This document shows positions 17,101 to 63,078 of a DNA stretch of 64,000 bases, one piece after another (positions within the stretch are counted from its first letter, which is position 1; the number at the start of each line of letters is the position of its first letter). The notes under the pieces are model-generated. The model ran no database searches and was not told where the DNA came from. It saw nothing but the letters and a program-made list of their open reading frames with translations. The translations under genes and the position numbers were made by a program. This DNA comes from Macrostomum lignano. Taxonomy: Eukaryota. The stretch covers positions 1-64,000 of the forward strand of contig NIVC01000618.1 of assembly GCA_002269645.1 (NCBI GenBank), given 5' to 3'.

Positions 17101-20100
17101 CTCCCCTGTACTCGTGGCTCAGCCAAAAGCCTATCAGATTTCAATAGCGCCCAGCTATTCTCTCTCACCATCCAATCTTTTTGCCTCATCTGGATAGAAG
17201 TTTTTGGAATCATGTTTTTGGCCCAGTAGGGGACAGGGAAGATCAGCTGTAGCAACCACCGGGGGGGGGGGTTAACTTGCAGTTTGACTGCGGGGGGGGG
17301 GTTAATTAGGAGCTGAGGAATAGGCATCGATCTGGAACACAGTTGCTGGCCAGGGGTTCTATTTCAATGCAAATTGGGTGTCCTCAGGGCTTTTTAGTGC
17401 TGTACGAGCGTAGTAATACATTTCTAATGTCCTTCAGATGTGCTTGTATCTAAAATAAGAAATTGACTCTGAGGTCAGCTGCACAGTTACCTGCATCTCA
17501 GGTGTACAGTTACCTGCATCTCAGGTGTACAGTTACCTGCATCTCAGGTGTACAGTTACCTGCATCTCAGGTGTACAGTTACCTGCATCTCAGGTGTACA
17601 GTTACCTACATCTCAGGTGTACAGTTACCTACATCTCAGGTGTGCAGTTACCTACATCTCAGGTGTACAGTTACCTACATCTCAGGTGTACAGTTACCTG
17701 CATCTCAGGTGTACAGTTACCTGCATCTCAGGTGTACAGTTACCTACATCTCAGGTGTGCAGTTACCTACATCTCAGGTGTACAGTTACCTGCATCTCAG
17801 GTGTACAGTTACCTGCATCTCAGGTGTACAGTAACCTCATCATCCTCGTCTCACCCAGCCTGCTCCAAAGCCCCTGCTCTCCATTTCCGCATGTGCCCCG
17901 CAGTGTCGGAGACTCCGGCCGGCTGCCATTCAGCGACGCCACCAGCAGCCCGCTCGAGGAGCTGCTGATCAGTCGGCACCAGGAGATGCACGGCGAGTAT
18001 CCCGTTGTTGGCGACTCGTGCGGCCGCCTGTCTGACCGTCGCAACAACGTGCTGCTGCTGTGCGAGCTGATGCTTGACGAGGAGGCCAGGGCGGCGGGGC
18101 TGGCGAACTCCAAGCAGGGCCGCCTGCATGGATTGCATTTTCGGGCTTCGTCAGTTCATGTGAGAACTGGGTGCTGCTACCTGCGTGTACAATGCAGTGC
18201 TCTGTGTGTACAATGCAGTGCTCTGTGTGTACAATGCAGTGCTCTGTGTGTACAATGCAGTGCTCTGTGTGTACAATGCAGTGCTCTGTGTGTACAATGC
18301 AGTGCTCTGTGTGTACAATGTAGTGCCCTGTGTGTACAATGCAGTGCTCTGTGTGGATATTGCAGTGCTCTGTGTGTACAATGCAGTGCCCTGTGTGTAC
18401 AATGCAGTGCTCTGTGTGGATATTGCAGTGCTCTGTGTGTACAATGCAGTGCCCTGTGTGTACAATGCAGTGCCCTGTGTGTACAATGCAGTGCCCTGTG
18501 TCTACAATGCAGTGCCCTGTGTGTACAATGCAGTGCCCTGTGTGTACAATGCAGTGCCCTGTGTGTACAATGCAGTGCCCTGTGTGTACAATGCAGTGCC
18601 CTGTGTGTACAATGCAGTGCCCTGTGTGTACAATGCAGTGCCCTGTGTGTACAATGCAGTGCCCTGTGTGTACAATGCAGTGCTCTGTTGCTTCAACCCC
18701 GCAGATACCCTATGGCAACTGTTCATTGCCTGAACAAAAGCGAACAATACTGGTTGGCATGACAACCAGCGACGCCGCATGGTACAAGGAGAATCTCTGG
18801 AAGCCCGGCTTTGTAACAGATATTTTATGTTCATTTTCTGGCTAATTTGCATTTTTCAACAAGTCGCGCAGAGCTTAACTGCTAGATTAGTACACAATCC
18901 TATATGATTTATTACTTGTAGGGGACAGATTGTATGAACGATCCTTCGCTGCAGACTTGCTCATTTATTGGCAATCATTTTATTTTATTCGCGAGCTTAT
19001 TTTATTGTATTGAGAACAATCATATTTGATGTTTTATCTTCTCATCTGCGAATCGATATAGGGCTAATCATGCAATAAATGTTCTGAACATGCTTGGCCA
19101 TTGTTGTTCTGAAAGCGAATCTGAGTCAAAGAGTCAAGGACTGGTGAAGTATTGATTTTATTATCAAAACTTGATTTTAAGTTTTGAATTTTGTGGAGTT
19201 TTGATTTTGTGAAGTTTTGAGCTTTTGAAGTTTTGATTTTGTAAAGTTTTGATTTTGTAAAGTTTTGATTTTGTTGAGTTTTGATTTTGTTGAGTTTTGA
19301 TTTTGTGAAGTTTTGAGCTTTTGAAGTTGTGATTTTGTGAAGTTTTGATTTTGTTGAGTTTTGATTTTGCGGAGTTTTGATTTTGTGAAGTTTTGACTTT
19401 GTGAAGTTTTGATTTTGTGAAGTTTTGATTTTGTGAAGTTTTGATTTTTGAAATTTTGATTTTGTGAAGTTTTGAGCTTTTGAAGTTGTGATTTTGTGAA
19501 GTTTTGAGCTTTTGAAGTTGTGATTTTGTGAAGTTGTGATTTTGTGAAGTTTTGATTTTGTGAAGTTTTGATTTTGTTGAGTTTTGATTTTGTGGAGTTT
19601 TGATTTTGCGGAGTTTTGATTTTGTGAAGTTTTGATTTTGTGGAGTTTTGATTTTGTGAAGTTTTGAGCTTTTGAAGTTGTGATTTTGTGAAGTTGTGAT
19701 TTTGTGAAGTTTTGATTTTGTTGAGTTTTGATTTTGTGGAGTTTTGATTTTGCGGAGTTTTGATTTTGTGGAATTTTGATTTTGCGGAGTTTTGATTTTG
19801 TGAAATTTTGATTTTGTGAAGTTTTGATTTCGTGGAGTTTTGATTTTGTGAAGTTTTGAGCTTTTGAAGTTTTGATTTTGTGAAGTTTTGATTTTGTAAA
19901 GTTTTGATTTTGTTGAGTTTTGATTTTGTGAAGTTTTGAGCTTTTGAAGTTTTGATTTTGTTGAGTTTTGATTTTGCGGAGTTTTGATTTTGTGAAGTTT
20001 TGATTTTGTGAAGTTTTGATTTAGAGCTGGAAGTTTTGATTTAGGGAACTTTTGATTTTGAGAAGTTTTGAGCTTGGCAAAGCGACCCGCGGGCATCGGA

Positions 20101-26683: not shown

Positions 26684-27961
26684 ATGTCGACGGACAAGCC
26701 AGAGGACGGCCTGACGGAGGAGCAGATCGAAGAATTCAGAGAAGCGTTCTCGCTGTTTGACAAAGACGGCGACGGCACAATCACGAACAAAGAGTTGGCC
26801 TCCGTGATGCGGGCTCTGGGGCAGAATCCGTCGCAGGAGGAGCTCAAGGTGAGCGCGCGATTGAGATGTGGGATTCGAGAATCAGGTATCACCAAAGGCG
26901 ATGGGTAATTGGAGAATGAATCATTGAAAATTGGTCATTAAAGAATTGGTCATTAAAGAATTGGTCATTGGAGAATTTGGTCATTGGAAAAATACATCTT
27001 GGGGTATTGGTCATTAAAGAATTGGTCATTGAGGAATTGGTCATTATAGAATTGGTCATTGGGGAATTGTTCATTTTGAAATTTGGTCTTTAGGGAATCG
27101 GTCATTGGAGAATTGGTCATTGGGATATTGGTCATTAAAGAATTGGTCATTTGAGAATTGGTCATTCGGGAATTGTCGATTATAGAATTGGTCATTGGGG
27201 AATAGTCATTCCGAAATTTGGTCATTGGGGAATCGGTCATTGAAGAATAGGTCATTTGGGACATTCGGGAATTGGCGATTATAGAATCGGTTATTGGGGA
27301 ATTGGTCATACAGTCAAGTGCGACAGCCACTATTTGAATATTTAAAATCATTTCAATGGCATTTCCTCCGGATGATAAATTAACAACCTGTCGAGCTTGC
27401 AATTTCCCTGAAGTTGTCGGTCACCGGGTGCTTTTGTTTCTTGTGCCCATTTTCAATTTCCAGGTCAGCATCCTGCTTTCATCGCAGCCCGAAATTACAT
27501 TCAGGGGAGTTGCATTTCCGGATTGCTCCCAGCCTCTCTCTGCTTTCCAAAACCTCTCGCTGCTTCATCCATTTGGTTTCATGAAAAATTCATTTCGCCA
27601 AGACTCTTCACCGTCACCACCCCGGGCACCCCAGGAGATGATCAAGGAGGTGGACCAGGACGGCTCCGGCAGCATCGAGTTCGACGAGTTCCTGGAGATG
27701 ATGAAGAAGCAGATGAACAGCGCAGACTCCGAGGAGGAGGTGCGTCGGGCTTTCCGCCTGTTCGACGCAGACGGAGACGGCTTCCTTAGCGCCACCGAGT
27801 TGCACCAGGTGATGCAGAACCTGGGCGAGCGACTCACTATGGAGGAGGTCGAGGCGATGATCGGCGAGGCGGACACTGACCGAGATGGCCAGGTGAGCTT
27901 CAGCGAGTTCGCCAAGATCATGGGCGTTGGCGGCGGCAGCGGCGGCGAGTCGAGCAGCTGA
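26684..27961 (+). CDS. Calmodulin-like protein, join(26684..26848,27635..27961), 163 aa
   Basis: Four EF-hand loops: [48 protein letters not shown]. Phase-0 intron AAG|GTGAGC...CCCAG|GAG joins EELK-EMIKEVD. Clearly diverged from canonical CaM. Confidence 0.93.
26915..27310. repeat. Degenerate 15/16-bp minisatellite (GAATTGGTCATTGGG)n in the calmodulin-like intron
   Basis: Shares the GGTCATTGGGGA core with the 22980-23607 array. Confidence 0.85.
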
Positions 27962-29752: not shown

Positions 29753-37226
<7,474 letters not shown>

Positions 37227-40200
37227 GGCTGTTGAGTTGGGTTCGAGTGTTATATAGTACATTGCTGTTAAAACTTATCTTAAATTGATCAACATGATAA
37301 AATGGACCTAAAAGTAAAAAAATTCAGACCTAAGTTTAAGAATATATGTCCTTGTTACAGTATTTACTTTTTGAGTTTTTATCTAAAAATACTAGTTGAA
37401 CTGCAGTGCACGTTTTCAATGTGACCAAAACGTTTTTGATTTTTGGCATATATTATTATAATGTTTAGTCTCTAACTGTTTCTTTGTACTAATATTACTG
37501 ATAACCTTTCTATTACCAAATTAATTTTAATAAAATTTAATCTGATTGGGTCAGGAAAAAACAGGTAACATATCTGTAGCTAATTAATAAATCTATAATT
37601 AACATATGCTGGAACCAGACTAATAATTTACTATAATTACAATGAGAAATATTTAAAATAAATCTATCAGAACAATAGACATCTCCATAATAGTGGCCAG
37701 ATTAAATAACTACGAAAAAATAATTTGTTCATCTAATTCTAAACAAAGAAGAGTTAAAGTCTGATACATTCGAAACAATAAAGGAAATTACATTAGTTAA
37801 ATGAGTTACATTAATAAGCTGAATATATTGTGGTTGGCAGAAATTTTGCAAATTAGGCTCGTAGACGTAATTCTTCTTTAAAAAAATACAGAAGATATTT
37901 ATTCATGCAGGTTAGAAATCTGAGTATTAAAAATGGAATAAAACAACCACTAACTGTTTGAAATTAATACCACCAATGAGCTACGGGAAAAAGCGGATGC
38001 ACTATGCATGTCAAAATGAAACAAACATTTTTAATCGACAAAATATTCTAAACAATAAAAAACCAAAATTATTTATTTAAAAACTATAAGACAGTAAGTT
38101 TTTTTTCAAGGATGAAATTATCTGTCTACTTTAAAAATGTTTCGTGATATTGTTTGAATGTTCTAGACCATAATTATTAATAAAAATGATATTTAAACAA
38201 TTGTCTAATTTAACCGCACCGCATGGGTCGTTCGCAAATTCTAGGAGGAGCAAAAATTTTAACAATTTTCCGAACATTTACTATTGTTACTGCCATATTG
38301 AAAATAATAGGACACTTTTATCTGTGAATAAAGATAATTTTTGGGTTAAACTTTATCATGCAAAAGTGTTTTTTAATCATCTGGCGGTATTAAGCGATAA
38401 TTAGCGATGAAAAAATTCAAATTCAATCATTTCACCGATGTTAATTTTTGGTACTACAAGATGTCTGTAGCTAAAAAAAAGTTGCTGTTGTGTTGAAACC
38501 TTGCTATATTACATTGAAAATTAAAGCTTATATAAATTTAATTTAAGATTTTTTTAAAGCTCAATAAACTGCACTATAAATGATTTTATAGACGCTTAAC
38601 TGTACGCCTAGCATTTCCGGTGGGATAGCCTCTTTGCGTCTCACAAAATGTATTTTTTCAGCTGACGTCTAGAATGTGCGCTTAAAATGATACATTTTGA
38701 TGCAGATAATTAGAAAAACATGTCTTTTTATCTTTTTGTAAAAAATTGTTATGAAATAGAGCACTATTGTTGATAAAAATAATTAAAAGCAACCATGCAT
38801 CGCAATAAACTCCTACTTTGAAGCACAAAATAAATATCCTGTAACCACACTAGCATTCTCCATGGAGCACCTTTTGAGCTGAAATTTTAAACAGATATTC
38901 AGTAAAGTAAACTGAGCAAATGATTTTTTTTGTTTTTGAAAATACTTCAATTTGGCTATGTATCAGTTAGTACATTGGACATATTTATTATATTTTTATT
39001 AAAATCCTTGTAACCAAGCTACAGAGAAACATGTGCAAAACTGGACCTTGAAATTTGACCTGAATGATCAGCAAATGTGTATCTCGAAATGATTTTTTTT
39101 GTTTTCATCAAGTCATTCTATGCTAATTTTTTCTGAAGGTAAAGATACCATATATTTAGAGTCAATAGGGGAAGCATTTAGACTTATTCAATAGTCATTA
39201 AAATTGCAACTATATTATTATAATATAGTAATAATATTATACATGTATTATATAGTAATATTAACTTCTAAGATGCCCTTATAAATTTAAGTAAAGACAA
39301 CAGGCCTTAATTAATTAATCAGCATTTTGAAGAAACTGACCTTATACAGATGGGCCCCAAGCTAAGAAATGAATGTAGAGCTTATTTCGTGTAAGGTATA
39401 AAAATCAATTTATTAAAATATTAAATACTTCTAATAAATTGGTTAAATTAGTTATTTACCTTGAATTAATTTAATTTTAATAATTAAATATATAAATTTG
39501 TTTCACTTCTTACTGCATTTAAATAGAGTACCTCTCTACTATACTATAGAAGTATAGTAAAAGTACATGGTAAAAAAGTATAGTAAAAAATTTTCTTTGG
39601 TTTAATCCCAGCTTGCCTCAGTTTTTTAGTCTTAATACGAGCTAGATAGTAAGTGTTGATTAATTTGCTCCATCACCTTTTGCCACGGAAACAGCACATG
39701 TCGGACATGCAACACTCTTCCTGATCCCTGGATTCAAGATGACTGCTTCTGCTTCTTCAATGCTTGAAAACTGAGCTCATGGAGCTTTAGGTTATGCTGT
39801 CAGAGTGCTGCTGCCGGTGCTGTGTGTGTATGTGTGTGTCTTCTGCGGGTAGGTTCCATGTCCCTCAGTTTAGCCACTGTTGTGGGCTAACTGGAGGAAT
39901 TGCCGTTGTCGGTGCTGCAGGTGGCACTGCATGGTAGTATTGACGCTGTCAGTGACGCTGGCAAAGGCTTGGACGAAGCTAGGTGCCGTCATTGTCAGAA
40001 GGACATGCGTGTGCTGCTTAGACCAGTGCGCACATTCGACTGGACTCGTATCTGGTGCAGTCTGGTGTATTCACTGAGATTGTGTGGATCTGCCTCCTCG
40101 CATCACCTCAACCAGGCTCAATTTCTTTTGTAGAATTTTCGTGCGCTGCTTAACTGCATCTTGTGCCTGCTGAGTGATGCCAAGAATTGTGCCACACAAT

Positions 40201-42103: not shown

Positions 42104-44505
42104 ATGAAAATTCGAATCACTTTAACCGTTTTTTCGCTTCTATTTTGCGCATTTAGCCAAGGTAAGTCAGTCAGTAATCATTCTATGAAGATTTCACTCG
42201 TAAGATTACCGGTTTACGTTTCTTAAAGCTTAATAAGATTTTACGACATTCCAGATCTAGGATGCTATTATGTGTTATTTGTGTATGTGTTTATTACCAG
42301 CTTTGTTGAGTTAAATTATTAATTCTCTTGGAGACGGAGAAAAATTTGAAAGCCAAAAATTGATTTAAATAGCATCATCTGTGAATGTTGTAAATATATT
42401 TTAAAACTTGTACGAAAACAGTCAGGAAAAAACCAATAAAATCCGCTCAAAAAAAATAAAAATAATTTTGAGCGGATGTACCATAGCCGTTTCAAACACA
42501 TAAACAGTAAGGAATGAATGGCCGATGTTAGTCGATTTTCAATGCCAGTAAATCCGAAATGACTAAATCTTCGCAAAACTGATTAAGACTAATTTTTAAA
42601 TAATTCACGAATGCATAAATCATAAATATCCGGATGACAAGAATGTTTAAGAATTGAGCGAATTCTGTGGGCAGATAAAAATAAGCCAACAGAGAGGCAC
42701 ATCAGATTTTTTATCACAGATGGTAAGTACGTAGTTCGCTGTTTCGACATGCAATCTGGCAAGAAATGTGTTTAGTAAGTTAATATTATATCTATATATC
42801 TAACCAAGCAGTATTCTGCACACCTACACCTACTACACACTGCAGTAAACTATAAAGATGACCTTGAAGCCCCACACACTATCGCTGCGCATGGAGGCAA
42901 ATGCATGGCAAGATACGAGTAGTTGCGAACGTTCTAAATATATAAAGTATTTGGTGAAGATTTACCGCGGTCTCTGCATCTGACTAAAGCATCTCAGTAT
43001 CTGTATACACTAAATAAACACATTAAGCGCTATTCCACACTTTTATTTATCTATGCCAGCTACAGCCTGAAGTTATACTTTATTATGACAAGAAGCATTT
43101 AAGTGGCAGATTCAATTTTCAACTTTGACTTTGTGCCAAGTCGACAACGTTGAGTGTTTCCAAGATAAAACTTTTAACTCGCTGAACATGGAAAACATCT
43201 GTAGTTCGTTGTCATTATTGCAAGCGCAGTGAGGTGATTGGATTATGGGGTCTTTGTGGTGTGAGATGGTTGGATAATGGGGGAGGGTTGTGTGAGTTTG
43301 TTGGATAACGCTGTGCTTTGTGCAGAGAGGTGTAGAGTGAATGCAGCGGTTCAGAAACACTATTTTAAATTTCATTGTTGGATAAAAAATGACTAAAACT
43401 GTTTTTTTCAGTAAGTACGGAATCGCGACAAGTTCTTGACAGCAGCGTATCAACAACCTCCGCCTTCACCACCGAGGGCGGCAACTTCACCAACGCCGAG
43501 GAGGGCGGCAACTTCACCAACGCCGAGGAAGGCGGCAACTTCACCAACGCCGAGGAGGGCGGCAACTTCACCAACGCCGAGGAAGGCGGCAACTTCACCA
43601 ACGCCGAGGAAGGCGGCAACTTCACCAACGCCGAGGAGGGCGGCAACTTCACCAACGTCGAGGAGGGCGGCAACTTCACCAACGCCGAGGAGGGCGGCAA
43701 CTTCACCACCACCAATGAGGGCGGCAACTTCACCACCACCAATGAGGGCGGCAACTTCACCACCAATGAGGGCGGCAACTTCACCACCAATGAGGGCGGC
43801 AACTTCACCACCACCAACGAGGGCGGCAACTTCACCACCAATGAGGGCGGCAACTTCACCACCACCAATGAGGGCGGCAACTTCACCACCACCAATGAGG
43901 GCGGCAACTTCACCACCACCAACGAGGGCGGCAACTTCACCACCAATGAGGGCGGCAACTTCACCACCACCAATGAGGGTGGCAACTTCACCACCACCAA
44001 TGAGGGCGGCAACTTCACCACCACCAATGAGGGTGGCAACTTCACCAGCACCAATGAGGGCGGCAACTTCACCAGCACCGAGGAGGGCGGCAACTTCACC
44101 AGCACCAATGAGGGCGGCAACTTCACCACCACCGAGGAGGGCGGCAACTTCACCACCACCAATGAGGGCGGCAACTTCACCACCACCGAGGAGGGCGGCA
44201 ACTTCACCACCACCAATGAGGGTGGCAACTTCACCACCACCGAGGAGGGCGGCAACTTCACCACCACCGAAAGTGGTGAAGTCACAACAACGATGACAAC
44301 CTCAAGCACCACTACGCCGTCGCCAGTGTCAAGCTTTGACGCCGGCTCCTTCGTCGGTGGAGCAGCCCTTGGCGCCGGACTGGCTATCGTTATCTACCTG
44401 TTGTGCATCTGCGCGAAGCGTCATCGAAACTACGGAAGCGCTAGCAGCCAGGACAGAAGCTACGGTTCAGCTGGATATCGGCGACTCGGCGGGTCGACAG
44501 CTTAG
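42104..44505 (+). CDS. CD164/porimin-like sialomucin A, join(42104..42161,43412..44505), 383 aa, with 30 EGGNFT repeats
   Basis: Signal-peptide exon MKIRITLTVFSLLFCAFSQ with phase-1 donor G|GTAAGT and acceptor TTTTTTTCAG|TA. The open frame, missed by the ORF track for lack of an internal start, reads STESRQVLDSS...(EGGNFTNAE/EGGNFTTTN)n...FDAGSFVGGAALGAGLAIVIYLLCIC. The FDAGSFVGG-TM signature is the CD164/TMEM123 type. Confidence 0.85.
43471..44267 (+). repeat. Coding VNTR, 24/27-bp units (GAGGGCGGCAACTTCACC...) x30
   Basis: All unit lengths are multiples of 3; 30 units counted from the alternative-frame translation. Confidence 0.95.
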
Positions 44506-45469: not shown

Positions 45470-45890
45470 AGTTTGCTTTCAGCCAAATGATGCTTGTGGA
45501 AGTTTGCGAGCCAAATTATGCTTGTGGAAGTTTGCCAGCCAAATTATGCTTGTGGAAGTTTGCCAGCCAAATTATGCTTGTGGAAGTTTGCGAGCCAAAT
45601 TATGCTTGTGGAAGTTTGCCAGCCAAATTATGCTTGTGGAAGTTTGCCAGCCAAAGGATGCTTGTGCAGGAAGTTTGCCAGCCAAAGGATGCTTGTGCAG
45701 GAAGTTTGCCAGCCAAAGGATGCTTGTGGAGGAAGTTTGCGAGCCAAAGGATGCTTGTGGAAGTTTGCCAGCCAAAGGATGCTTGTGCAGGAAGTTTGCC
45801 AGCCAAAGGATGCTTGTGCAGGAAGTTTGCCAGCCAAAGGATGCTTGTGGAGGAAGTTTGCCAGCCAAAGGATGCTTGTGGAAGTTTGCG
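45470..45890. repeat. 28-31-bp minisatellite (GCTTGTGGAAGTTTGCCAGCCAAA[TTAT/GGAT])n
   Basis: Two successive variant types; lies between the two sialomucin genes. Confidence 0.92.
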
Positions 45891-46390
45891 AGCTACTACG
45901 TCGAACGTGTTTTCCATCATGCGACACTTTTAAGTTGCTTAGTGCAATGTAAGTTACAAAAGCATAAAAAATGCACATTGAAAACTAGCAATAAAAACGT
46001 AATGAATAATTTCTGACAACATATTATTGTTTATAATAATTTAATATTAAATCCAACCTCAATATAGCGTTGCAAACAAATTTTCTTTCGGCAAAAAACG
46101 CCTAATCAGAATTTACGACTCAGTTGAAATAATGAAATAGCAAAGCCATACTCACAGCATTATTTACAAGCAACATACAAGAGGACGCTTCACATTATTT
46201 TAGTCATTGTTGATAAGCTATTTTCAACGGTATAACTTGTTATAATTAATCGCTAGCGATAAGCGCTATTGGCGCAAATTTAAATTAAGAATTTGAATTC
46301 TGTATTCAGATCTACCAGAGCTGTCTGAAAACTATCTACGTAATCCCCGTGGCAATTTTATTACTCATTTAATACTTTGGTTTTGCCAGG

Positions 46391-47041
46391 ATGAAGATCT
46401 ACAACAGCAGGATTTCGCTGCTGCTGATTGCTTCAATTTTTGCTGCTTTTGCTGTGCATCATTGTGAGTGCCAACTAGCAGTCTGTTTGTTTCAACGCGT
46501 TTTTCTGCTTATATTCGGCGCTGTTGCGAGTCTGCATTTAGTATAAAACAAAACTACTCATTTTTATACATTTTTTTTTATTTTTATGTAACTTTATGTC
46601 AGACTTTGCCAGCAGATAAACTATTCTCAATTTCATTGAGCAGGCAGCCCCCTGCCTCAGTTGGACGACTCAGTGGCACAGCTTGACGACTCGGAGTGGG
46701 ATCTGAGCGCAGACAATGACACCACGGTCTCAACCGACCAGACGACTGGCTCAACAGAATCTACAAGCGGCTTCACAACGACCGGCCCATCGGACAACTC
46801 AACATCAGCCGAGCCGCAGAGCACGCCAGACAGCTCCGGCACAACCGCTGCGCCGACGACAAGCGGCACAACGTCGAAGGCCCCGACGACAACGACGACG
46901 ACGACAGCTCCGCCGTCTGGCGGCTTCGACGCCGGCTCGTTTGTTGGCGGCATCGCCCTGGGCGCTGGCCTGGTAGCACTCGGCCTGTTCGTCTTCACGT
47001 TCTACAAACGGCGAACAGGTCGCTCCTATCAACGGATGTAA
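46391..47041 (+). CDS. CD164/porimin-like sialomucin B, join(46391..46463,46644..47041), 156 aa
   Basis: Signal exon MKIYNSRISLLLIASIFAAFAVHH with phase-1 donor T|GTGAGT and acceptor GAGCAG|GC. Ser/Thr-rich ectodomain, FDAGSFVGGIALGAGLVALGLFVFTFY TM and C-terminal YQRM* (YxxPhi). Confidence 0.88.
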
Positions 47042-53467: not shown

Positions 53468-56400
53468 TCAGCACTCGAACTCGCGGGTTGTGAGGCCTTT
53501 CAGATCTTGAATGAGGCCGTCCAGAGTCTTTGTCATGTCCATGTCCTCCGTGGACAGGTTGAACTGAAATTGTGGGCGGGAGAAACTTCGCATTAATTAC
53601 AATCTGGATTATCATAGGGATGTCAGCAGGATCCGTAAGGTATCAGATGGATCAGTGTCAGAGGGACATATGATATGCTAGAGGAATCCATGGGGTATCA
53701 GAGGGATCCATGGGGTGTCAGGGGGGTTCATGGGGTGTCAGAGGGATCCATGGGGTGTCAGAGGGATCCATGGGGTGTCAGAGGAATCCATGTATGTCAA
53801 ATGGATTTATGTAGTGTCAGATGGATCCGTGGGGTGTCAGAGGGATCCGTGGGGTGGCAGAATCCATGCAGTGTCAGATGGACGTTAAAGTCGAGCGAAG
53901 GATGTCAGAGCGGAGATCAACGTTATCTTAAACGATGCACAAAGTGTTTGGATGCACCAGCCGCCAGTAGCTGAACGAGCGCACCGGAAAAGTGCAACAG
54001 TGCATCGTAACAAATGGGAGATTAGCTTGGCCTAGCTTGTAAGCCCCAGCTTACATTTCGAGAGTTCTGACTCTCCAGAGTGAGGCTGCCTACAGTGGCT
54101 TGGCTGTTCCTGAGCTGCTGCTGCTGCTGGTGCGGGTGCTGCTGCTGGTGCTGCCTCTGACCGGACGCCGGGCTCAGAATGTCCGGCGCAGGGTACGGCC
54201 TCGAATGCGTCGACGTTGACATCAGGGAGCCGGCAGCGGCTGCGTGTCGCTGCTTTGAAGCCGAGCCGATGGACGAGCTGAGACTCGAATGGGGACTGGA
54301 CAGCTTGCCGGCTGCAGGTGGGAGGGGTTCGGGACATTGTCACTCTTACATGGCCATTGTCACTCTTACATGGGCATTGTCACTCTTACATGTCACTCCC
54401 CCTCTTACTCAGAGAATTGTCACTCCCTCTACTCAGAGCATTGCCACTCCCTCTACTCAGAGAATTGTCACTCCCTCTACTCAGAGCATTGTCACTCCCT
54501 CTACTCAGAGAATTGTCACTCCCTCTACTCAGAGAATTGTCACTCCCTCTACTCAGAGCATTGCCACTCCCTCTACTCAGAGCATTGCCACTCCCTCTAC
54601 TCAGAGCATTGCCACTCCCTCTACTCAGAGCATTGCCACTCCCTCTACTCAGAGCATTGCCACTCTCTCTACTCAGAGCATTGCCACTCCCTCTACTCAG
54701 AGCATTGCCACTCCCTCTACTCAGAGCATTGCCACTCCCTCTACTCAGAGCATTGCCACTCCCTCTACTCAGAGCATTGCCACTCCCTCTACTCAGAGCA
54801 TTGCCACTCCCTCTACTCAGAGCATTGCCACTCCCTCTACTCAGAGCATTGCCACTCCCTCTACTCAGAGCATTGCCACTCCCTCTACTCAGAGCATTGT
54901 CACTCCCTCTACTCAGAGCATTGCCACTCCCTCTACTCAGAGAATTGTCACTCTTATCCAACACTACCCAGACCAATCGAAACGGCGACTCACGCGAGGA
55001 AAAGTCAGGCGCGTCGACCCTAGGCGGCGAAGCAACGGAGTTGAGCCGCTGGCCGCCCTGCTGATGCGAATAGGAGCCGCTGCCGGAGTTGGACAGATTC
55101 CGGAAATGCCCGGCTACTGACGGGTTCGGCACCGGCCCCGACTCCAGCAGCATCTGCGGCGGCGGCGGCAGCTGCATCGACACCATCGGACGAGCGCCAA
55201 CCCCGGCATAGTCGGCGGGCATGGCTCGAAGTTCGAAATCGGCGTGACGGCATAAATCCGGTGTGTGCTGCTGCTGCTGGAGCTGGTGCTGCAGCTGGCG
55301 ATGGTGATGCTGCTGCTGCTGCTGGAGCTGGTGCTGCAGCTGGTGGCTGGCCAGCAGGGCCGCCGTGGAACTTGGCGGCATCGACAGAGGCGACGCCGTG
55401 CTGAGCATGCCGGGTCCCGGCGGCGGCTGCATCGACTGCTGCGACTGAGGAGGCGACTGTGGATGCTGCTGCTGCTGCTCGGGCCCGCCGCCGATCAGGC
55501 TGGCGCTCTCTTTGGCGCCGCGGGCGCGCTGTTGGCTGTCGGCGGAGCGGCGCGGCCGGCGCTGCTGGCACATGCAGACCACGGCTGTGGAGACGGCCAG
55601 GAGCAGCAGGGCCAGGCCGAACACGCCGCCAATCAGCAGCCACCAGCGCCGGCTAGACAGGCCGTCCGACTCGGCCCCGTCCGATGAGTCTTTGTTCGGG
55701 GGGAGTTAGGGGAACAGAGTTTAAAAAGGAAATTTTAACTTAAAAAAGAACTACTCTGAAAAGTTGACAGTTGACTCACCACGCTGCAGCACGGAGTCCG
55801 TGTTGTAAACCACGCCGCCGCCCTGACCAGACGCTGCGGAGTGAGTGATTAGTGCTGAAGTATTAGGGTCACATCAATCCCAACAAGATTTACAAGAATC
55901 CCAACCACATTCACAAGAATCCCAACCAGATTCACAAGAATCCCAACCAGATTCACAAGAATCCTAACAAGATTCACAAGAATCCCAACCAGATTCACAA
56001 GAATCCCGACAAGATTCACAAGAGTCCCAACCAGATTCACAAGAATCCCAACCAGATTCACAAGAATCCCGACAAGATTCACAAGAGTCCCAACCAGATT
56101 CACCAGAATCCCAACTAGATTCACAAGAATCCCAACCAGATTCACAAGAATCCCAACCACATTCACAAGAATCCGAACCAGATTCACAAGAATCCCAACC
56201 ACATTCACCAGAAACTCAATCAGATTCACAAGAATTCCAACCACATTTACAAAAATCCTGACAAGATTCACAAGAATCCCAACCAGATTCAAAAGGATCC
56301 CAACCAGATTCACAAGAATCCCAACCAGATTCAAAAGGATCCCAACCAGATTCACAAGAATCCCAACCAGATTCACAAGAATCCCGACAAGATTCACAAG

Positions 56401-57239
56401 AGTCCCAACCAGATTCACCAGAATCCCAACTAGATTCACAAGAATCCCAACCAGATTCACAAGAATCCCAACCACATTCACAAGAATCCGAACCAGATTC
56501 ACAAGAATCCCAACCACATTCACCAGAAACTCAATCAGATTCACAAGAATCCAACACAATCCACGGCACTCACAGTCCGGCATCATAAACTCGATCGCGT
56601 CGCTATCCGGCCCGAATCCTTCGCTATTTCCGGCTCGAACCCGGAAATAATAGTGCGTAGACGGTCTCAAACCGGTGATGACTACCTGAGTCTCTGCTGT
56701 CGGCATAGCGTGCTCGGACCCGGCCGGTTTGGCACTATTCGAACTAACCGGCCGATAGAGCACCGTGTACTTTGTAATTTTACCATTGGGCTCGAGCGGC
56801 GGCAGCCAGGACAGCATAACGGACATTGGCAGGGTGGACCGGCTGATCTTGAGGTCGCGCGGCGGACTCCCCGGCGCCTCGGGCTCTGTTGAGAAGCTCG
56901 CCCTCAGGCTGAAGCTGGACGGCACGACGGTTTGGTCCGAGGCCAGGGCCAGGCAGCGGACCCGAACCGAATAGGCGGTGCTGGGCCGCAGGCCGACAAG
57001 TCTCGCGCTCAGCTCGCTGGTGTTCAAACGCCAGGATGACGGAGTCTGCGGCTGCGGCTGCTGCTCGGCCGTCTCCAGCGACCACTCAACCTCGTAAATT
57101 CGGCGGCCGCTAGACGGCTGGTCGGCCTGCTGATCCGTCCAGGAGACTGTCGCATTGCGGCTGCCCACCTGCGTGGCCTTCAACGCCATTGGCACCTGCG
57201 GCAGCGGGCGTTCGGCTGAGGGAAAACCGGAGGGAAGCA

Positions 57240-61200: not shown

Positions 61201-63078
61201 AGATCCCATCTATCCTACCATCTAGATCTCATTTATCCCATCATCTAGATCCCATCTATCCCGTCATCTAGATCCCATATATCCCATCATCTAGATCCCA
61301 TCTATCCCATTATCTAGATCCCATCTATCCCATCATCTAGATCCCATCTATCCCGTCATTCAGTTAATATATATCCCATTATCAAGACCCCATTATCAAG
61401 GTCCCACCACCAAGATCCCATCATCGAGATTCGATCCTCAAGATCCCATCACCAAGCTCCCACTCACTCAGATTGATGATCTGGAAGGTGTCCCGGTTGC
61501 CGGGGATTTCGCCAGCCACCCTCTCCTTAGCAACATGAGCGCCGTAGGTGATGATGTACTTGTCTGGCAGCACGTGAGACGGCCGGATCCATGACAGCAG
61601 GATGGAGTCCGGCTTGCCAATGGGTATCAGCTCTTTAATCCGTAGCTGTTCGGCCAGCGCCTCCGTGGGGGCCGATTGGCGATTTGTAGAATCCGCCATA
61701 GTTCCGGAATTAATCGATAGGTCTGCAAATTTTGGCGCGAATTTAAATTTCAAAATGTACTAAACTCCAGAATTGAATATCAAACAAACACTGGAAAAGC
61801 CCACAATAGTTGACAAGCAGAATTTTATAGTCAAGAGTCACAGGATCACCTAAGCGTCAAGCAAGCAACTGGAGTCAGAATGTTCCACAGAGCGAACCAG
61901 TTGGAGGCAATAAACAGAGGCAGCAAATGTTTTTATTGTTATTATCATAGCATCCTGTCTAGCGGGGACACGGCAATTCTAAACTGCTGCAATGCGTTCA
62001 GCATGATTTCAAACCCGTGATTTCGTATAAAATTCGACTAGAGTTCGGGTGAAGGGGTTAGCGACAAGGTGGCAGCGCATTGAGGACTTTATTATGCTAG
62101 AAGGACCTGGGCTCGACTCCAAATGTCAGGGGCACCAAATGAGGTGTCAGGTGAACCAAATCAAATGTCAGGTGAGCCAAATTAAATGTCAGGTGAACCA
62201 AATGAGGTGTCAGGGGGAGCCAAATGAAGTGTCAGGGGAGCCAAATGAGGTGTCAGGGGAGCCAAATGAGGTGTCAGGGGAGCCAAATGAGGTGTCAGGG
62301 GGAGCCAAATGAGGTGTCAGGGGAGCCAAATCAAATGTCAGGTGAGCCAAATCAAGTGTCAGATGAGCCAAATTAAATGTCAGGTGAACCAAATCAAATG
62401 TCAGGGGAGCCAAATCAAATGTCAGGTGAGCCAAATGAGGTGTCAGGGGAGCCAAATGAGGTGTCAGGGGAGCCAAATGAGGTGTCAGGGGAGCCAAATG
62501 AGGTGTCAGGGGGAGCCAAATGAGGTGTCAGGGGAGCCAAACCAGATGTGGGATTGCAGAGTGCTAAAATCCGAGCTCCCAACTCACAGGCGTTCCGGTG
62601 GCCAGTGTCGAACGGCAGCCAGTCGGTGAAGGCGCCAACAAAGCCGGCGGCAGTGCGAGCGGCCACGCGGACAAGAAACCGCCGCTTAGCAGGCAGGCCC
62701 GGCGGCAGCTGGCATTCAAGGCCGGCCACGGTCAGCAGCCGCTGTTCATTGTTGTCGTCGTCATCTTCAACGGTTGCAGCCGGTCGATAAGCGACAATAT
62801 AGTCGGCAATCTCGGAGTCGGCCGCAGACTGTGGCGGTTGCCAGGCAACGTGCACAACGCCGTCTCGAGACCAGGCGGTGAGGCCGGACGGCGGAGCGAT
62901 ATTAGGTTGGCCGAGGCCGATTACTAGGCTGGCCGACGGGGAGAACCGGCCGTCCGGGCCAAGGATTCTAGCCGACAGGCGATTCGTCGAGCGGCCGATG
63001 GGCAGATCGGCCAATGTGGCCGAGCAGCTGGCCGAGGTGACGGCCGGGCCGCTGCTGGGTGGAGGCTGAAGTCGCAGT
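53468..63078 (-). CDS. fra: Netrin receptor frazzled/DCC/neogenin/UNC-40, 3' half (FN3 repeats, TM, P1-P3); complement join(53468..53563,54055..54311,54994..55689,55780..55833,56574..57215,58791..58883,61468..61722,62588..63078); continues beyond the window
   Basis: All junctions are phase-consistent. FN3 repeats match DCC FN3-FN6, e.g. [19 protein letters not shown]...[44 protein letters not shown]1-like [15 protein letters not shown]3 terminal exon [28 protein letters not shown]. Confidence 0.93.
53690..53880. repeat. 20-bp minisatellite (GGGGTGTCAGAGGGATCCAT)n
   Basis: In the last fra intron. Confidence 0.85.
54345..54955. repeat. 24-bp minisatellite (GCCACTCCCTCTACTCAGAGCATT)n
   Basis: Period 24; fills intron 54993-54312. 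Confidence 0.95.
55870..56555. repeat. 21-bp minisatellite (AATCCCAACCAGATTCACAAG)n
   Basis: Fills intron 56573-55834; source of the spurious NLVGILV extension. Confidence 0.95.
57238..58280. repeat. (GTCT)n microsatellite of about 1 kb with recurrent AGCT interruptions
   Basis: Degenerate CTAT/CTAC tail continues to about 58620. Confidence 0.97.
59601..60014 (-). mobile_element. Degenerate non-LTR retrotransposon (RTE/R4-like) reverse-transcriptase thumb fragment in a fra intron
   Basis: [22 protein letters not shown]...LGGLAL resembles my recollection of the RTE/R4-clade motif RKxLTMxxxxHPKSDVDRLYLPRxxGGRGL. No splice signals fit it into fra. Confidence 0.4.
61010..61355. repeat. 23-bp minisatellite (CTAGATCCCATCTATCCCATCAT)n
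   Basis: Period 23. Confidence 0.93.
62122..62545. repeat. 21-bp minisatellite (GTGTCAGGGGAGCCAAATGAG)n with an ATCAAATGTCAGGTG variant
   Basis: Period 21. Confidence 0.92.

What the first reader, a model, noticed from the sequence alone, without database searches (positions are those of the whole stretch)
43412..44505. Coding minisatellite that mass-produces N-glycosylation sequons in a CD164/porimin-like mucin
Seen: the real frame (absent from the ORF track) encodes 30 tandem units, EGGNFTNAE then EGGNFTTTN/EGGNFTTN/EGGNFTSTE, each carrying N-F-T. All units are 24 or 27 bp, unlike the non-coding arrays here, which carry 1-bp indels; this suggests selection on frame. Established: CD164/TMEM123 stalks are typically Ser/Thr O-glycan mucins. 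Inference: an acidic N-glycan bottle-brush with one sequon every 8-9 residues, probably length-polymorphic, possibly for glycocalyx, mucus, adhesion or allorecognition.
Basis: partly seen in the sequence, partly recalled or inferred. Interest (0 to 1): 0.7.

Follow-up and report, generated by a model that had tools for sequence, protein, structure and literature searches.

The report
Sialomucin gene with N-glycan-site repeats
A small two-exon gene for a CD164/porimin-type membrane glycoprotein has had its outer stalk replaced by 30 near-identical 8-9-residue repeats that each carry one N-glycosylation site (Asn-Phe-Thr); the gene looks real, but whether the sugars are attached is untested.

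Summary
Positions 43477-44274 hold 30 tandem units (26 of 27 bp, 4 of 24 bp), and each encodes GGNFT.

The array is very probably coding:
- It lies in exon 2 of a two-exon gene (42104-42161 + 43412-44505, 383 aa): signal peptide, acidic repeat stalk, Thr/Ser stretch, FDAGSFVGG plus transmembrane helix, and a tail with YRRL.
- The GGNFT frame fits local codon usage (+0.88 bits/codon). All other frames and all 21 other arrays tested score +0.08 or less.
- The frame has no start codon before 44293, so it needs the splice from exon 1.
- The C-terminal module matches Pfam MGC-24 (CD164/porimin).

A previously unnoticed tandem paralog lies 1.9 kb downstream (46391-47041, 156 aa). It has the same exon structure and an ordinary Pro/Thr/Ser stalk. 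Between the two genes the membrane module shows pS 0.70 against pN 0.06, so both are under purifying selection.

N-glycan occupancy, length polymorphism and function remain inference. AlphaFold2 predicts a β-solenoid, a known artefact for repeats, and this remains a rival. No ortholog was found.

Verdict: a new variant of a known kind, of moderate interest.

The parts
42104..42161 (+). Gene A exon 1. It encodes MKIRITLTVFSLLFCAFSQ plus the first base of the Val codon: a signal peptide with a probable cleavage site after AFS. Donor is AAG|GTAAGT.
   Evidence: Signal-peptide features were judged by inspection only (basic n-region, hydrophobic core, small residues at -3 and -1).
42162..43411 (+). 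Gene A intron, 1250 nt, phase 1. Acceptor is TGTTTTTTTCAG.
   Evidence: An in-frame stop at 43390 lies just upstream of the acceptor.
43412..44505 (+). Gene A exon 2: the mature ectodomain, transmembrane helix, tail and the TAG stop (44503-44505).
   Evidence: The frame has no ATG, GTG or TTG before ATG 44293.
43414..43473 (+). Non-repeat N-terminal stretch STESRQVLDSSVSTTSAFTT.
   Evidence: Together with unit 1 it aligns to paralog B residues 51-81, p=0.006 against shuffles.
43477..43692 (+). Repeat units 1-8, type A: GGNFTNAEE (unit 7 is NVEE). The only Thr in each unit is the sequon Thr.
43693..44274 (+). Repeat units 9-30, type B: GGNFT(T/S)T(N/E)E, with four 24-bp units GGNFTTNE. The last seven full units alternate ...EE and ...NE, a 54-bp higher-order period.
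44275..44334 (+). Juxtamembrane Thr/Ser/Pro stretch GEVTTTMTTSSTTTPSPVSS, the classical O-glycan type.
44335..44415 (+). FDAGSFVGG motif running into the transmembrane helix FVGGAALGAGLAIVIYLLCICA. This is the core of the Pfam MGC-24 match.
   Evidence: Against paralog B, pS is 0.70 and pN 0.059, Fisher p=8e-6.
44416..44502 (+). Cytoplasmic tail KRHRNYGSASSQDRSYGSAGYRRLGGSTA. It contains a duplicated R-[NS]-Y-G-S-A and the YxxPhi-type motif YRRL (44476-44487).
   Evidence: The motif is read in the light of the CD164 YHTL literature (PMC4510537).
44748..44753 (+). AATAAA, the candidate polyadenylation signal of gene A, about 240 nt after the stop.
46391..46463 (+). Paralog B exon 1: MKIYNSRISLLLIASIFAAFAVHH plus one base, a signal peptide. 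Donor is ATT|GTGAGT, phase 1.
46644..47041 (+). Paralog B exon 2: a Pro/Thr/Ser stalk with two sequons (NDT, NST), FDAGSFVGG, a transmembrane helix, and the tail KRRTGRSYQRM followed by TAA.
   Evidence: Pfam MGC-24 50.9 bits, E=2.7e-13.

Best explanation
Gene A (42104-42161 + 43412-44505) encodes a 383-residue type I membrane glycoprotein of the MGC-24 family, which includes CD164/endolyn and TMEM123/porimin. It is one of two tandem paralogs.

In gene A, a 27-bp coding minisatellite has expanded a short stalk segment that already carried one N-glycosylation sequon. The corresponding segment in paralog B is FTTTGPSDNSTSAE. The result is 30 copies of E-G-G-N-F-T-x(2-3).

The expected course is as follows. 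The signal peptide sends the chain into the ER. There the translocon-associated oligosaccharyltransferase meets 30 unfolded N-F-T sites, of the more efficient N-x-T type and with no Pro nearby, and glycosylates most of them. This would produce a very acidic, extended, N-glycan-studded stalk of about 270 residues. Net peptide charge is about -46, carried by Glu in the backbone rather than by sialic acid. The stalk sits on a short O-glycan-type juxtamembrane stretch. Its likely role is as a space-filling, repulsive or lectin-ligand glycocalyx component. The YRRL motif in the lengthened tail would permit AP-2-type endocytosis. Paralog B keeps the short, C-terminal, lysosome-type YQRM tail.

Shown here: the repeat anatomy, the gene model, the coding frame, family membership of the membrane module, the paralog, and purifying selection on the module.

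Inferred: signal-peptide cleavage, glycan occupancy, disorder, trafficking, function and polymorphism.
For: - The repeat has 30 units, all encoding GGNFT.
- The splice sites are consistent and the intron is phase 1. Paralog B has the identical two-exon, phase-1 layout.
- The frame has an upstream stop at 43390 and no start codon until 44293, so the repeat can be translated only through exon 1.
- Codon-usage log-odds are +0.88 bits/codon in the GGNFT frame. The other five frames score -0.08 or less, and the best frame of any of the 21 other arrays tested scores +0.08 or less. Every core codon is the locally preferred one.
- Pfam MGC-24 scores: A C-terminus 32.1 bits, A collapsed to one unit 35.4 bits, B 50.9 bits, against a gathering score of 28.5.
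- A and B over the FDAGSFVGG-TM block: 10 of 14.3 synonymous sites differ but only 2 of 33.7 non-synonymous sites, p=8e-6.
- The same FDAGSFVGG-TM-YxxPhi ending occurs in a porimin-like contig and in other eukaryotic contigs.
- The 15-nt GGNFT core is invariant apart from three synonymous GGC>GGT changes. All other variation lies in codons 6-9.
- Type A units contain no Thr or Ser other than the sequon Thr, and the repeats contain no Pro. The feature common to all units is therefore the sequon, not an O-glycan motif.
- Unit 1 with its flank aligns to B's NST-containing segment, p=0.006 to 0.018.
- Even directly adjacent NXT sites can be glycosylated by the STT3A complex (PMC6761772).
- The charge-hydropathy calculation puts the repeat well on the disordered side: H 0.368 against a boundary of 0.471.
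Against: - There is no transcript, protein or glycan evidence.
- No ortholog was found in any database, so conservation of the sequon cannot be tested.
- Invariance of the core may reflect recent amplification or homogenisation rather than selection.
- The full-length protein scores 27.6 bits against MGC-24, just under the gathering score of 28.5.
- AlphaFold2 predicts a beta-solenoid for the repeat: mean pLDDT 70, reaching 80-88 in type B units. A control frame of the same DNA gets pLDDT 38.
- The non-repeat parts of the gene have only weakly frame-discriminating codon scores.
- The signal peptide was judged by eye only.
Confidence: 0.55

Rival explanations
1. The protein is real, but the repeat folds into a rigid beta-solenoid or beta-roll rod. 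Two nonapeptides would form each 18-residue coil, with Phe stacked in the core, GGN forming the turns and Thr-rich flat faces. The repeat would then work as a structured spacer, an adhesive or self-associating surface, or a Thr-faced surface of the ice- or mineral-binding kind. Glycans would be absent or would sit only on the edges.
For: - The AlphaFold2 single-sequence model is beta-rich: pTM 0.58, mean pLDDT 70, blocks of 80-88 over units 20-29, and strands recurring about every 18 residues.
- A control, the reverse-strand frame of the same array, was not folded: pLDDT 38, pTM 0.21.
- The best Foldseek neighbours are beta-helices: tailspikes, Ag43 and curli CsgA.
Against: [quoted passage not shown]
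- No Foldseek match reaches E<=0.001, and TM-scores are 0.32 or less.
- The repeat has 43 Glu and no basic residue. A parallel solenoid would stack uncompensated charges, which is the implausible feature that paper flags.
- The charge-hydropathy plot predicts disorder.
- The control frame contains Pro-Pro and so is not a neutral control.
- The unit does not fit the RTX consensus GGxGxDxUx, and there was no Pfam hit to it at E<=10.
- Co-translational glycosylation would precede any folding.
Confidence: 0.15
2. The protein is an ordinary O-glycan sialomucin-type stalk. The Thr clusters (TTT, TT, STT) carry the functional glycans. The N-F-T sequon is a passenger of the amplified unit and is largely unoccupied or functionally irrelevant.
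For: - The repeat is 25% Thr and the family is classed as sialomucins (PMC8147968).
- In the PTPRA ectodomain O-glycans dominate the solution structure, N-glycans are dispensable for surface expression, and O-glycans can even sit on sequon residues (PMC10369406).
- Sequons can arise in repeats by chance (array 19179-20071).
Against: - The eight type A units have no Ser or Thr except the sequon Thr.
- The repeats have no Pro, which is unusual for GalNAc-transferase-rich PTS domains, and have Glu next to the Thr runs.
- N-x-T in an unfolded secretory chain is the default substrate of the oligosaccharyltransferase (PMC6761772).
- The homologous position in paralog B is also a sequon, NST.
Confidence: 0.15
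3. The array is not translated. Gene A would be a decaying duplicate or a short gene. For example, translation could start at ATG 44293, or exon 1 could splice to a site downstream of the array. The repeat would then be just another of the window's many minisatellites sitting in an intron or UTR.
For: - 26% of the window is tandem repeat.
- Many arrays are open in several frames.
- No database protein matches gene A.
- There is no expression evidence.
Against: - Codon usage singles out the GGNFT frame among six frames and 22 arrays.
- The only in-phase AG sites after the array (exon starts at 44282 and 44327) lack a T-rich tract: T fraction 0.11 against 0.47 at 43412.
- Starting at 44293 would give a protein without a signal peptide.
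- The membrane module is under purifying selection against the paralog.
- The array is flanked in frame by sequence homologous to B's stalk on both sides.
Confidence: 0.07

Closest known systems
Paralog B in the same window (46391-46463 + 46644-47041)
   Same: - Same strand, 1.9 kb downstream.
- Same two-exon, phase-1 structure.
- Signal peptide beginning MKI.
- Identical FDAGSFVGG motif and xALGAGL transmembrane start.
- Acidic stalk.
- A sequon (NST) at the position that aligns with the repeat's NFT.
   Different: B is 156 aa with a non-repetitive Pro/Thr/Ser stalk and only 2 sequons. Its 11-residue tail ends in YQRM. A has the 30-unit array, no Pro in the repeats, and a 29-residue tail with YRRL five residues from the end.
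TMEM123 / porimin (Pfam PF05283 MGC-24)
   Same: - Small type I mucin-like membrane protein without a Cys-rich domain.
- A porimin-like last exon recovered from a metagenome contig (L016) has the identical FDAGSFVGG, then a transmembrane helix, then a short tail ending YRTM.
- The ectodomain is described as rich in glycosylated Thr/Ser (PMC8147968).
   Different: No tandem-repeat array and no regular sequon lattice is described for porimin. Orthology could not be tested, because no close relative is in the databases.
CD164 / endolyn (MGC-24v)
   Same: - Same Pfam family.
- Type I sialomucin with a short tail bearing a YxxPhi sorting motif.
- Already N-glycan-rich: 9 predicted sites in 139 ectodomain residues (PMC9239079).
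- Gene A keeps 'RNY' right after the membrane, as in CD164's RNYHTL.
   Different: CD164 has two mucin domains flanking a Cys-rich domain, and a C-terminal RNYHTL reported as 100% conserved from human to roundworm (PMC4510537). Gene A has no Cys in its ectodomain and RNY is followed by GSA plus a 21-residue extension. Gene B ends YQRM.
Schistosoma mansoni polymorphic mucins (SmPoMuc)
   Same: An invertebrate mucin-like protein with a signal peptide followed by a variable number (1 to about 55) of 9-residue tandem repeats, and highly polymorphic (PMC2576457).
   Different: SmPoMuc repeats are separate 27-bp exons within repeat units of about 1 kb. The proteins are secreted and not membrane-anchored, are unrelated in sequence, and the repeats are not built around an N-x-T sequon.
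PTPRA ectodomain and VNTR membrane mucins (MUC1 type)
   Same: Disordered, densely glycosylated ectodomains that shield or extend from the membrane. PTPRA combines 7 N-sites with more than 30 O-sites (PMC10369406). In the MUC1 type the coding minisatellite sets stalk length.
   Different: In those proteins the repeated or dominant glycan acceptor is Ser/Thr in a Pro-rich context. Here the only residue pattern shared by all 30 units is an N-x-T sequon, at 11.2 per 100 residues, and the negative charge is in the peptide backbone.
RTX nonapeptide beta-roll (GGxGxDxUx)
   Same: An acidic nonapeptide repeat starting with Gly-Gly. The AF2 model has a period of about 18 residues, that is two nonapeptides per coil as in beta-rolls.
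   Different: Consensus positions 4 (Gly), 6 (Asp) and 8 (large hydrophobic) are not met: here they are F, T/N and N/E. There is no Pfam match. RTX is a bacterial secreted-protein motif.

Membership tests
Pfam PF05283 MGC-24 (CD164 / porimin / CD164L2 sialomucins) | Profile-HMM match at or above the curated gathering score (28.5 bits) | tested here: met
   A C-terminal 81 aa scores 32.1 bits (E=1.8e-7). A with the array collapsed to one unit scores 35.4 bits. Paralog B scores 50.9 bits (E=2.7e-13). Full-length A with all 30 units scores 27.6 bits, just under the cut-off.
Pfam PF05283 MGC-24 (CD164 / porimin / CD164L2 sialomucins) | Type I topology: N-terminal signal peptide, one transmembrane helix, short cytoplasmic tail | tested here: met
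   Judged by inspection of the translated gene model. No dedicated signal-peptide or TM predictor was available.
Pfam PF05283 MGC-24 (CD164 / porimin / CD164L2 sialomucins) | Conserved juxtamembrane motif FD(A/T)GSF(V/I)GG leading into the transmembrane helix | tested here: met
   FDAGSFVGG is identical in A, in B and in a porimin-like contig L016. That this motif is the family signature is partly recalled from memory. The Pfam alignment covers it.
CD164 / endolyn proper | Cysteine-rich domain between two mucin domains | tested here: not met
   A's ectodomain has no Cys and B's has a single Cys. The feature is as described in PMC9239079.
CD164 / endolyn proper | C-terminal RNYHTL (YxxPhi lysosomal or endocytic sorting signal at the very C-terminus) | tested here: not met
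   A reads ...KRHRNYGSAS...GYRRLGGSTA*. It keeps RNY but not HTL-stop, and YRRL sits 5 residues from the end. B reads ...GRSYQRM*, a YxxPhi at the C-terminus but not RNYHTL (PMC4510537).
Classical PTS tandem-repeat mucin domain | Tandem repeats rich in Pro, Thr and Ser | tested here: not met
   Repeat composition is T 25%, G 22.5%, N 20.6%, E 16%, F 11%, S 1.5% and P 0%. Type A units have one Thr each.
Classical PTS tandem-repeat mucin domain | Dense O-GalNAc glycosylation of the repeats | not testable with these tools
   This needs glycoproteomics or lectin and glycosidase assays.
N-glycoprotein (occupied sequons) | N-x-S/T (x not Pro) in a lumenal or extracellular segment of a protein that enters the ER | tested here: met
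   There are 30 N-F-T sequons downstream of a signal peptide and upstream of the transmembrane helix, with no Pro at +1 or +3. Occupancy itself was not tested.
RTX beta-roll repeats | Nonapeptide consensus GGxGxDxUx | tested here: not met
   The unit is GGNFT(N/T)(A/T)(E/N)E. There was no HemolysinCabind hit at E<=10.
Coding VNTR (length-polymorphic minisatellite) | Different copy numbers among alleles or individuals | not testable with these tools
   Only one haplotype is available. A degenerate-pattern scan of metagenome contigs found no second copy.

The most novel reading that the evidence does not exclude
This is a natural, genetically encoded N-glycan bottle-brush. A membrane sialomucin-family protein has switched its stalk from O-linked to N-linked glycan display by minisatellite amplification of one ancestral sequon. 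The anionic charge is written into the backbone as Glu rather than supplied by sialic acid. If most of the 30 sites are occupied, it would be among the densest regular N-glycan arrays in any animal protein, and copy number would tune glycocalyx height directly.
Probability: 0.3. Interest if true: 0.6.

Novelty: new variant of a known kind. Interest (0 to 1): 0.4.

Why it matters
Mucin-type stalks are almost by definition Pro/Thr/Ser repeats that carry O-glycans. If the prediction holds, this gene shows the same architectural role built from N-glycans, using a repeat whose only constant feature is an N-x-T sequon. An ordinary paralog sits next to it as a built-in comparison. That pairing would allow a clean evolutionary and biophysical comparison of O-glycan and N-glycan brushes. 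It would also be a natural template for N-glycan-dense polypeptides, and a case where a minisatellite created protein function. The practical weight is limited. The organism is unknown, no ortholog was found and nothing has been tested at the bench.

Tried and rejected
1. Homolog searches with the full protein and with the C-terminal 76 residues found nothing.
2. An exhaustive phmmer search of exon 2 against 1.84 billion representatives gave 522 hits. All 19 retrieved and inspected were unrelated low-complexity repeat proteins, such as TLNEGGEDE, PPDDGGNVT, DDGGNATTT and phage-fibre-like TGETGNFVTT. None had the MGC-24 ending. I treat them as convergent composition, not homologs.
3. A synteny route through the neighbouring GPR158/179-like receptor failed. 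Its best database relatives are only 48-50% identical, with named ones being molluscs at 42-46% and insects at about 37%. The 20-kb loci around the best hit contain no MGC-24-like ending. The source organism therefore stays unidentified; it is probably a non-insect invertebrate.
5. A scan of metagenome contigs for DNA encoding GGNFTTTNEGGNFT gave 0 hits.
6. A scan for FDAGSFVGG gave 41 loci, of which about five are genuine family-type endings. None has GGNFT repeats.
7. Rfam found nothing in the window.
9. I rejected RTX and 'New glue' membership. The RTX consensus is not met, and the New_glue hit scores 21 bits against a cut-off of 31.
10. A full-text search for 'GGNFT' found no relevant paper.
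11. tblastn of both proteins against the window found no third paralog.
Full report
**1. The observation**

The window is eukaryotic and exceptionally rich in minisatellites. TRF lists 68 rows, which merge into 33 intervals covering 26% of the 64 kb. One of them, at 43467-44268, has period 27, 30.1 copies and 92% matches.

Translation in the frame whose codons start at 43411+3n gives an uninterrupted reading from just after a stop at 43390 to the TAG at 44503-44505. Anchoring on the invariant GG[CT]GGCAACTTCACC finds exactly 30 units between 43477 and 44274. Spacing is 27 bp in 25 intervals and 24 bp in 4, and every unit encodes G-G-N-F-T. The unit types are:
- Units 1-8: GGNFTNAEE (one is NVEE).
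- Units 9-30: GGNFT(T/S)T(N/E)E, or the shortened GGNFTTNE.

The protein has 30 N-x-T sequons and no N-x-S, 8 or 9 residues apart.

**2. Is the array coding?**

- The only length change is loss of one ACC from an ACC-ACC-ACC run. Slippage there gives +/-3 bp regardless of selection.
- Of the 22 other arrays, 10 show no interval with an offset that is not a multiple of 3. This holds for 6 of the 11 arrays whose period is divisible by 3.
- Open frames are common in the non-coding arrays.
- One AT-rich 16-bp array (19179-20071) even shows 11 sequons in an open frame by chance.

The case for coding rests on other evidence.

(a) Gene context.
- Exon 1 (42104-42161) encodes MKIRITLTVFSLLFCAFSQ plus one base and ends in AAG|GTAAGT.
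- Exon 2 begins after TGTTTTTTTCAG at 43412.
- The intron phase fits: G|TA gives Val.
- The repeat frame has no ATG, GTG or TTG between the stop at 43390 and ATG 44293. This explains its absence from the ORF list and means it can be translated only via the splice.
- The only in-phase AG sites downstream of the array lack a T-rich tract.

(b) Codon usage. I trained a codon table on 3.8 kb of Pfam- or homology-supported exons from the same window (GC3 = 0.80).
- The GGNFT frame scores +0.88 bits per codon.
- The other five frames score -0.08 or less.
- The best open frame of any of the 21 other arrays tested scores +0.08 or less.
- GGC, AAC, TTC, ACC, GAG and GCC are each the locally preferred codon.

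(c) Family membership. After the array the same frame continues into GEVTTTMTTSSTTTPSPVSS, then FDAGSFVGG, a transmembrane helix, and the tail KRHRNYGSASSQDRSYGSAGYRRLGGSTA. This part matches Pfam MGC-24 (PF05283, the CD164/porimin family), whose gathering score is 28.5 bits:

| Query | Bits |
|---|---|
| A, C-terminal 81 aa | 32.1 (E=1.8e-7) |
| A, array collapsed to one unit | 35.4 |
| A, full length with all 30 units | 27.6 |

The full-length score falls just under the cut-off.

(d) A tandem paralog. A motif scan found a second gene 1.9 kb downstream on the same strand, 46391-46463 + 46644-47041.
- It has the same two-exon, phase-1 layout and a signal peptide beginning MKI.
- It carries a 94-residue non-repetitive Pro/Thr/Ser stalk with two sequons (NDT, NST).
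- It has the identical FDAGSFVGG, a transmembrane helix, and the tail KRRTGRSYQRM followed by a stop.
- It scores 50.9 bits against MGC-24, E=2.7e-13.

(e) Selection. Over the 16-codon FDAGSFVGG-TM block the two genes differ at 10 of 14.3 synonymous sites but only 2 of 33.7 non-synonymous sites. That gives pS 0.70 against pN 0.059, Fisher p=8e-6. The duplication is therefore old, and both copies have been kept under purifying selection in this frame.

Taken together, gene A is very probably a real gene and the array is translated. No transcript data were available.

**3. Where the repeat came from**

The mature N-terminus of A plus its first unit (STESRQVLDSSVSTTSAFTTEG--GNFTNAE) aligns with B residues 51-81 (TTVSTDQTTGSTESTSGFTTTGPSDNSTSAE). 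Against composition-preserving shuffles, p is 0.006 for the whole stretch. For FTTEGGNFTNAE against FTTTGPSDNSTSAE, p is 0.018. The NFT of the unit lines up with B's NST. This suggests, but does not prove, that the minisatellite amplified a stalk segment that already carried a sequon.

Within the array the 15-nt GGNFT core is invariant except for three synonymous GGC>GGT changes. All other variation falls in codons 6-9, giving 13 DNA unit types and 8 peptide types. The last seven full units alternate ...EE and ...NE. This pattern fits a constraint on the core. It fits equally well with recent amplification and homogenisation.

**4. What the protein would be**

The mature polypeptide is 364 residues, 37 kDa, with pI about 4.05. 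The ectodomain has 47 Asp/Glu against 1 Lys/Arg, 96 Ser/Thr and only 2 Pro. The repeat itself is T 25%, G 22.5%, N 21%, E 16%, F 11% and P 0%.

Two points favour the sequon as the functional constant.
- Type A units contain no hydroxy-amino acid other than the sequon Thr.
- Pro, typical of GalNAc-transferase-rich PTS repeats, is absent.

N-x-T is the efficient sequon form, and even directly adjacent NXT sites can be modified by the translocon-associated STT3A complex (PMC6761772). Gaps of 5-6 residues between sites should therefore not hinder occupancy. The charge-hydropathy calculation places the repeat deep on the disordered side, H 0.368 against a boundary of 0.471.

The most likely picture is an extended, acidic, N-glycan-studded stalk on an MGC-24-type membrane anchor. 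Thirty glycans would be expected to add at least as much mass as the 37-kDa peptide. The negative charge is supplied by backbone Glu rather than by sialic acid.

The tails differ between the paralogs.
- B ends in YQRM, 7 residues from the membrane. This resembles the C-terminal YxxPhi signals of CD164 (YHTL) and of the porimin-like contig L016 (YRTM).
- A retains RNY at the CD164-equivalent position but continues with GSA and an extension. The extension contains a second R-S-Y-G-S-A and then YRRL, 5 residues from the end.

This suggests endocytic rather than lysosome-type sorting for A. That reading is inference.

**5. The structural rival**

AlphaFold2 without an alignment predicts the repeat as a beta-solenoid.
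- Mean pLDDT is 70.4 and pTM 0.58.
- Ten-residue blocks reach 80-88 over the type B units.
- Strands recur about every 18 residues.
- The transmembrane helix is recovered.

Foldseek against the PDB returns only generic beta-helices (tailspikes, Ag43, curli CsgA). No match reaches E<=0.001, and TM-scores are 0.32 or less.

As a control I folded the reverse-strand open frame of the same array (VVVKLPPSL...). It gave pLDDT 38 and pTM 0.21. The prediction is therefore not automatic for any frame of this period, although the Pro-Pro in the control makes it an imperfect control.

[quoted passage not shown] Human mucin 22 is a natural example (PMC11795689). Here 43 Glu and no basic residue would stack in such a fold. 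I keep a folded rod as a rival at about 0.15. The unit does not fit the RTX nonapeptide consensus.

**6. Relatives elsewhere**

None was found.
- Word-indexed searches with the whole protein and with the C-terminus gave nothing.
- Exhaustive phmmer of exon 2 against 1.84 billion representatives gave 522 hits at E<=0.001. All 19 retrieved and inspected are unrelated repeat proteins, and none has the MGC-24 ending.
- A degenerate DNA pattern for GGNFTTTNEGGNFT found nothing in metagenome contigs.
- A pattern for FDAGSFVGG found 41 loci. L012, L016/L028 (porimin-like), L021 and L029 end in the same motif followed by a transmembrane helix and a YxxPhi tail. The last two sit behind arrays of Cys-rich PSI-like modules. 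None carries GGNFT repeats.

The neighbouring GPR158/179-like receptor gene (minus strand, about 30.3-37.2 kb) has best database identities of only 48-50%. Named hits are molluscs at 42-46% and insects at about 37%. The source is therefore an invertebrate whose genome is not in these collections, and synteny could not be used.

**7. Comparison with known systems**

The protein works like a membrane sialomucin and is a member of Pfam MGC-24 by its membrane module. It is not a strict CD164 ortholog, because it lacks both defining features:
- the Cys-rich domain (PMC9239079);
- the C-terminal RNYHTL, reported as conserved from human to roundworm (PMC4510537).

It is closer to porimin in architecture. 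N-glycan richness is not foreign to the family: CD164 has 9 predicted sites in 139 residues. What is new is the regular, repeat-encoded lattice, at 11.2 sequons per 100 residues, in place of a PTS stalk.

Other comparisons:
- SmPoMuc of Schistosoma shares the format of a 9-residue VNTR after a signal peptide. It is encoded by repeated 27-bp exons, is secreted, and is unrelated (PMC2576457).
- The PTPRA ectodomain is a studied example of a disordered stalk with mixed N- and O-glycans. There the O-glycans dominate the solution structure (PMC10369406), which is a caution for the N-glycan reading.
- A full-text search for GGNFT found no relevant paper.

**8. Verdict**

The coding status and family assignment are well supported. 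The 'bottle-brush', the polymorphism and the biological roles remain predictions. I file it as a new variant of a known kind. Interest is moderate (0.4). It is an unusual and testable glycoprotein design with a built-in paralog control, but it is lineage-restricted, comes from an unidentified organism and has no experimental support.

Noticed in passing
window 46391-46463 and 46644-47041 (+): A second MGC-24/porimin-like gene (156 aa) lies 1.9 kb downstream of the finding. It has the same two-exon, phase-1 structure, an ordinary Pro/Thr/Ser stalk, and a tail ending YQRM. It scores 50.9 bits against Pfam MGC-24. A 28-bp minisatellite (45480-45893) lies between the two genes.
   Followed up: yes
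window 1-64000: About 26% of the window (33 merged intervals, 16.5 kb) is tandem repeat. Most are 15-65-bp minisatellites of 10-60 copies, and many abut exons of neighbouring genes, for example 31347-31779, 54400-54953 and 55869-56552. Coding exons have GC3 of about 0.80, while intergenic DNA is 26-35% GC.
   Followed up: partly
window 30343-37262 (-): A multi-exon GPR158/179-like class C receptor gene has minisatellites in its introns. Pfam GPR158_179_EC matches one exon at E=7.6e-15. The best database relatives are only 48-50% identical, with named ones being molluscs, so the source genome is not in the protein collection.
   Followed up: partly
window 44425-44487 (+): The cytoplasmic tail of gene A contains an internal duplication, R-N-Y-G-S-A followed by R-S-Y-G-S-A, ahead of YRRL. 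The first copy sits where CD164 has its C-terminal RNYHTL. The tail therefore looks like a lengthened version of the family's short tail.
   Followed up: partly
window 44266-44280 (+): The sequence right after the last unit reads T-E-S-G-E. A Ser-Gly flanked by acidic residues resembles a glycosaminoglycan attachment site. This rests on recalled knowledge and was not tested.
   Followed up: no
L021 and L029 (metagenome contigs Ga0181505_10769124, Ga0272412_1099747): The same FDAGSFVGG, transmembrane helix and Y-T-E-L-K ending terminates proteins made of many Cys-rich PSI-like modules (CxWC motifs). The membrane module may be older and more widely used than the sialomucin family itself.
   Followed up: partly
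window 19179-20071 (-): A non-coding AT-rich 16-bp minisatellite reads as an open 297-codon frame with 11 N-x-S/T sequons (NFT, NST). It is a useful reminder that sequons in repeat ORFs arise by chance.
   Followed up: yes
P0188, P0210, P0114 (hits): Unrelated proteins from other organisms carry convergent acidic GGN-x-T repeats: DDGGNATTT, PGGNGTTTI and PPDDGGNVT. At least some look bacterial. They are not homologous to the finding.
   Followed up: no
window 9537-10601 (+), 27356-27961 (+), 55849-57195 (-), 62415-63014 (-): Other genes in the window are a purple-acid-phosphatase-like metallophosphoesterase exon, an EF-hand (calmodulin-like) exon, and fibronectin-III exons of a receptor-like gene (Pfam).
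   Followed up: no
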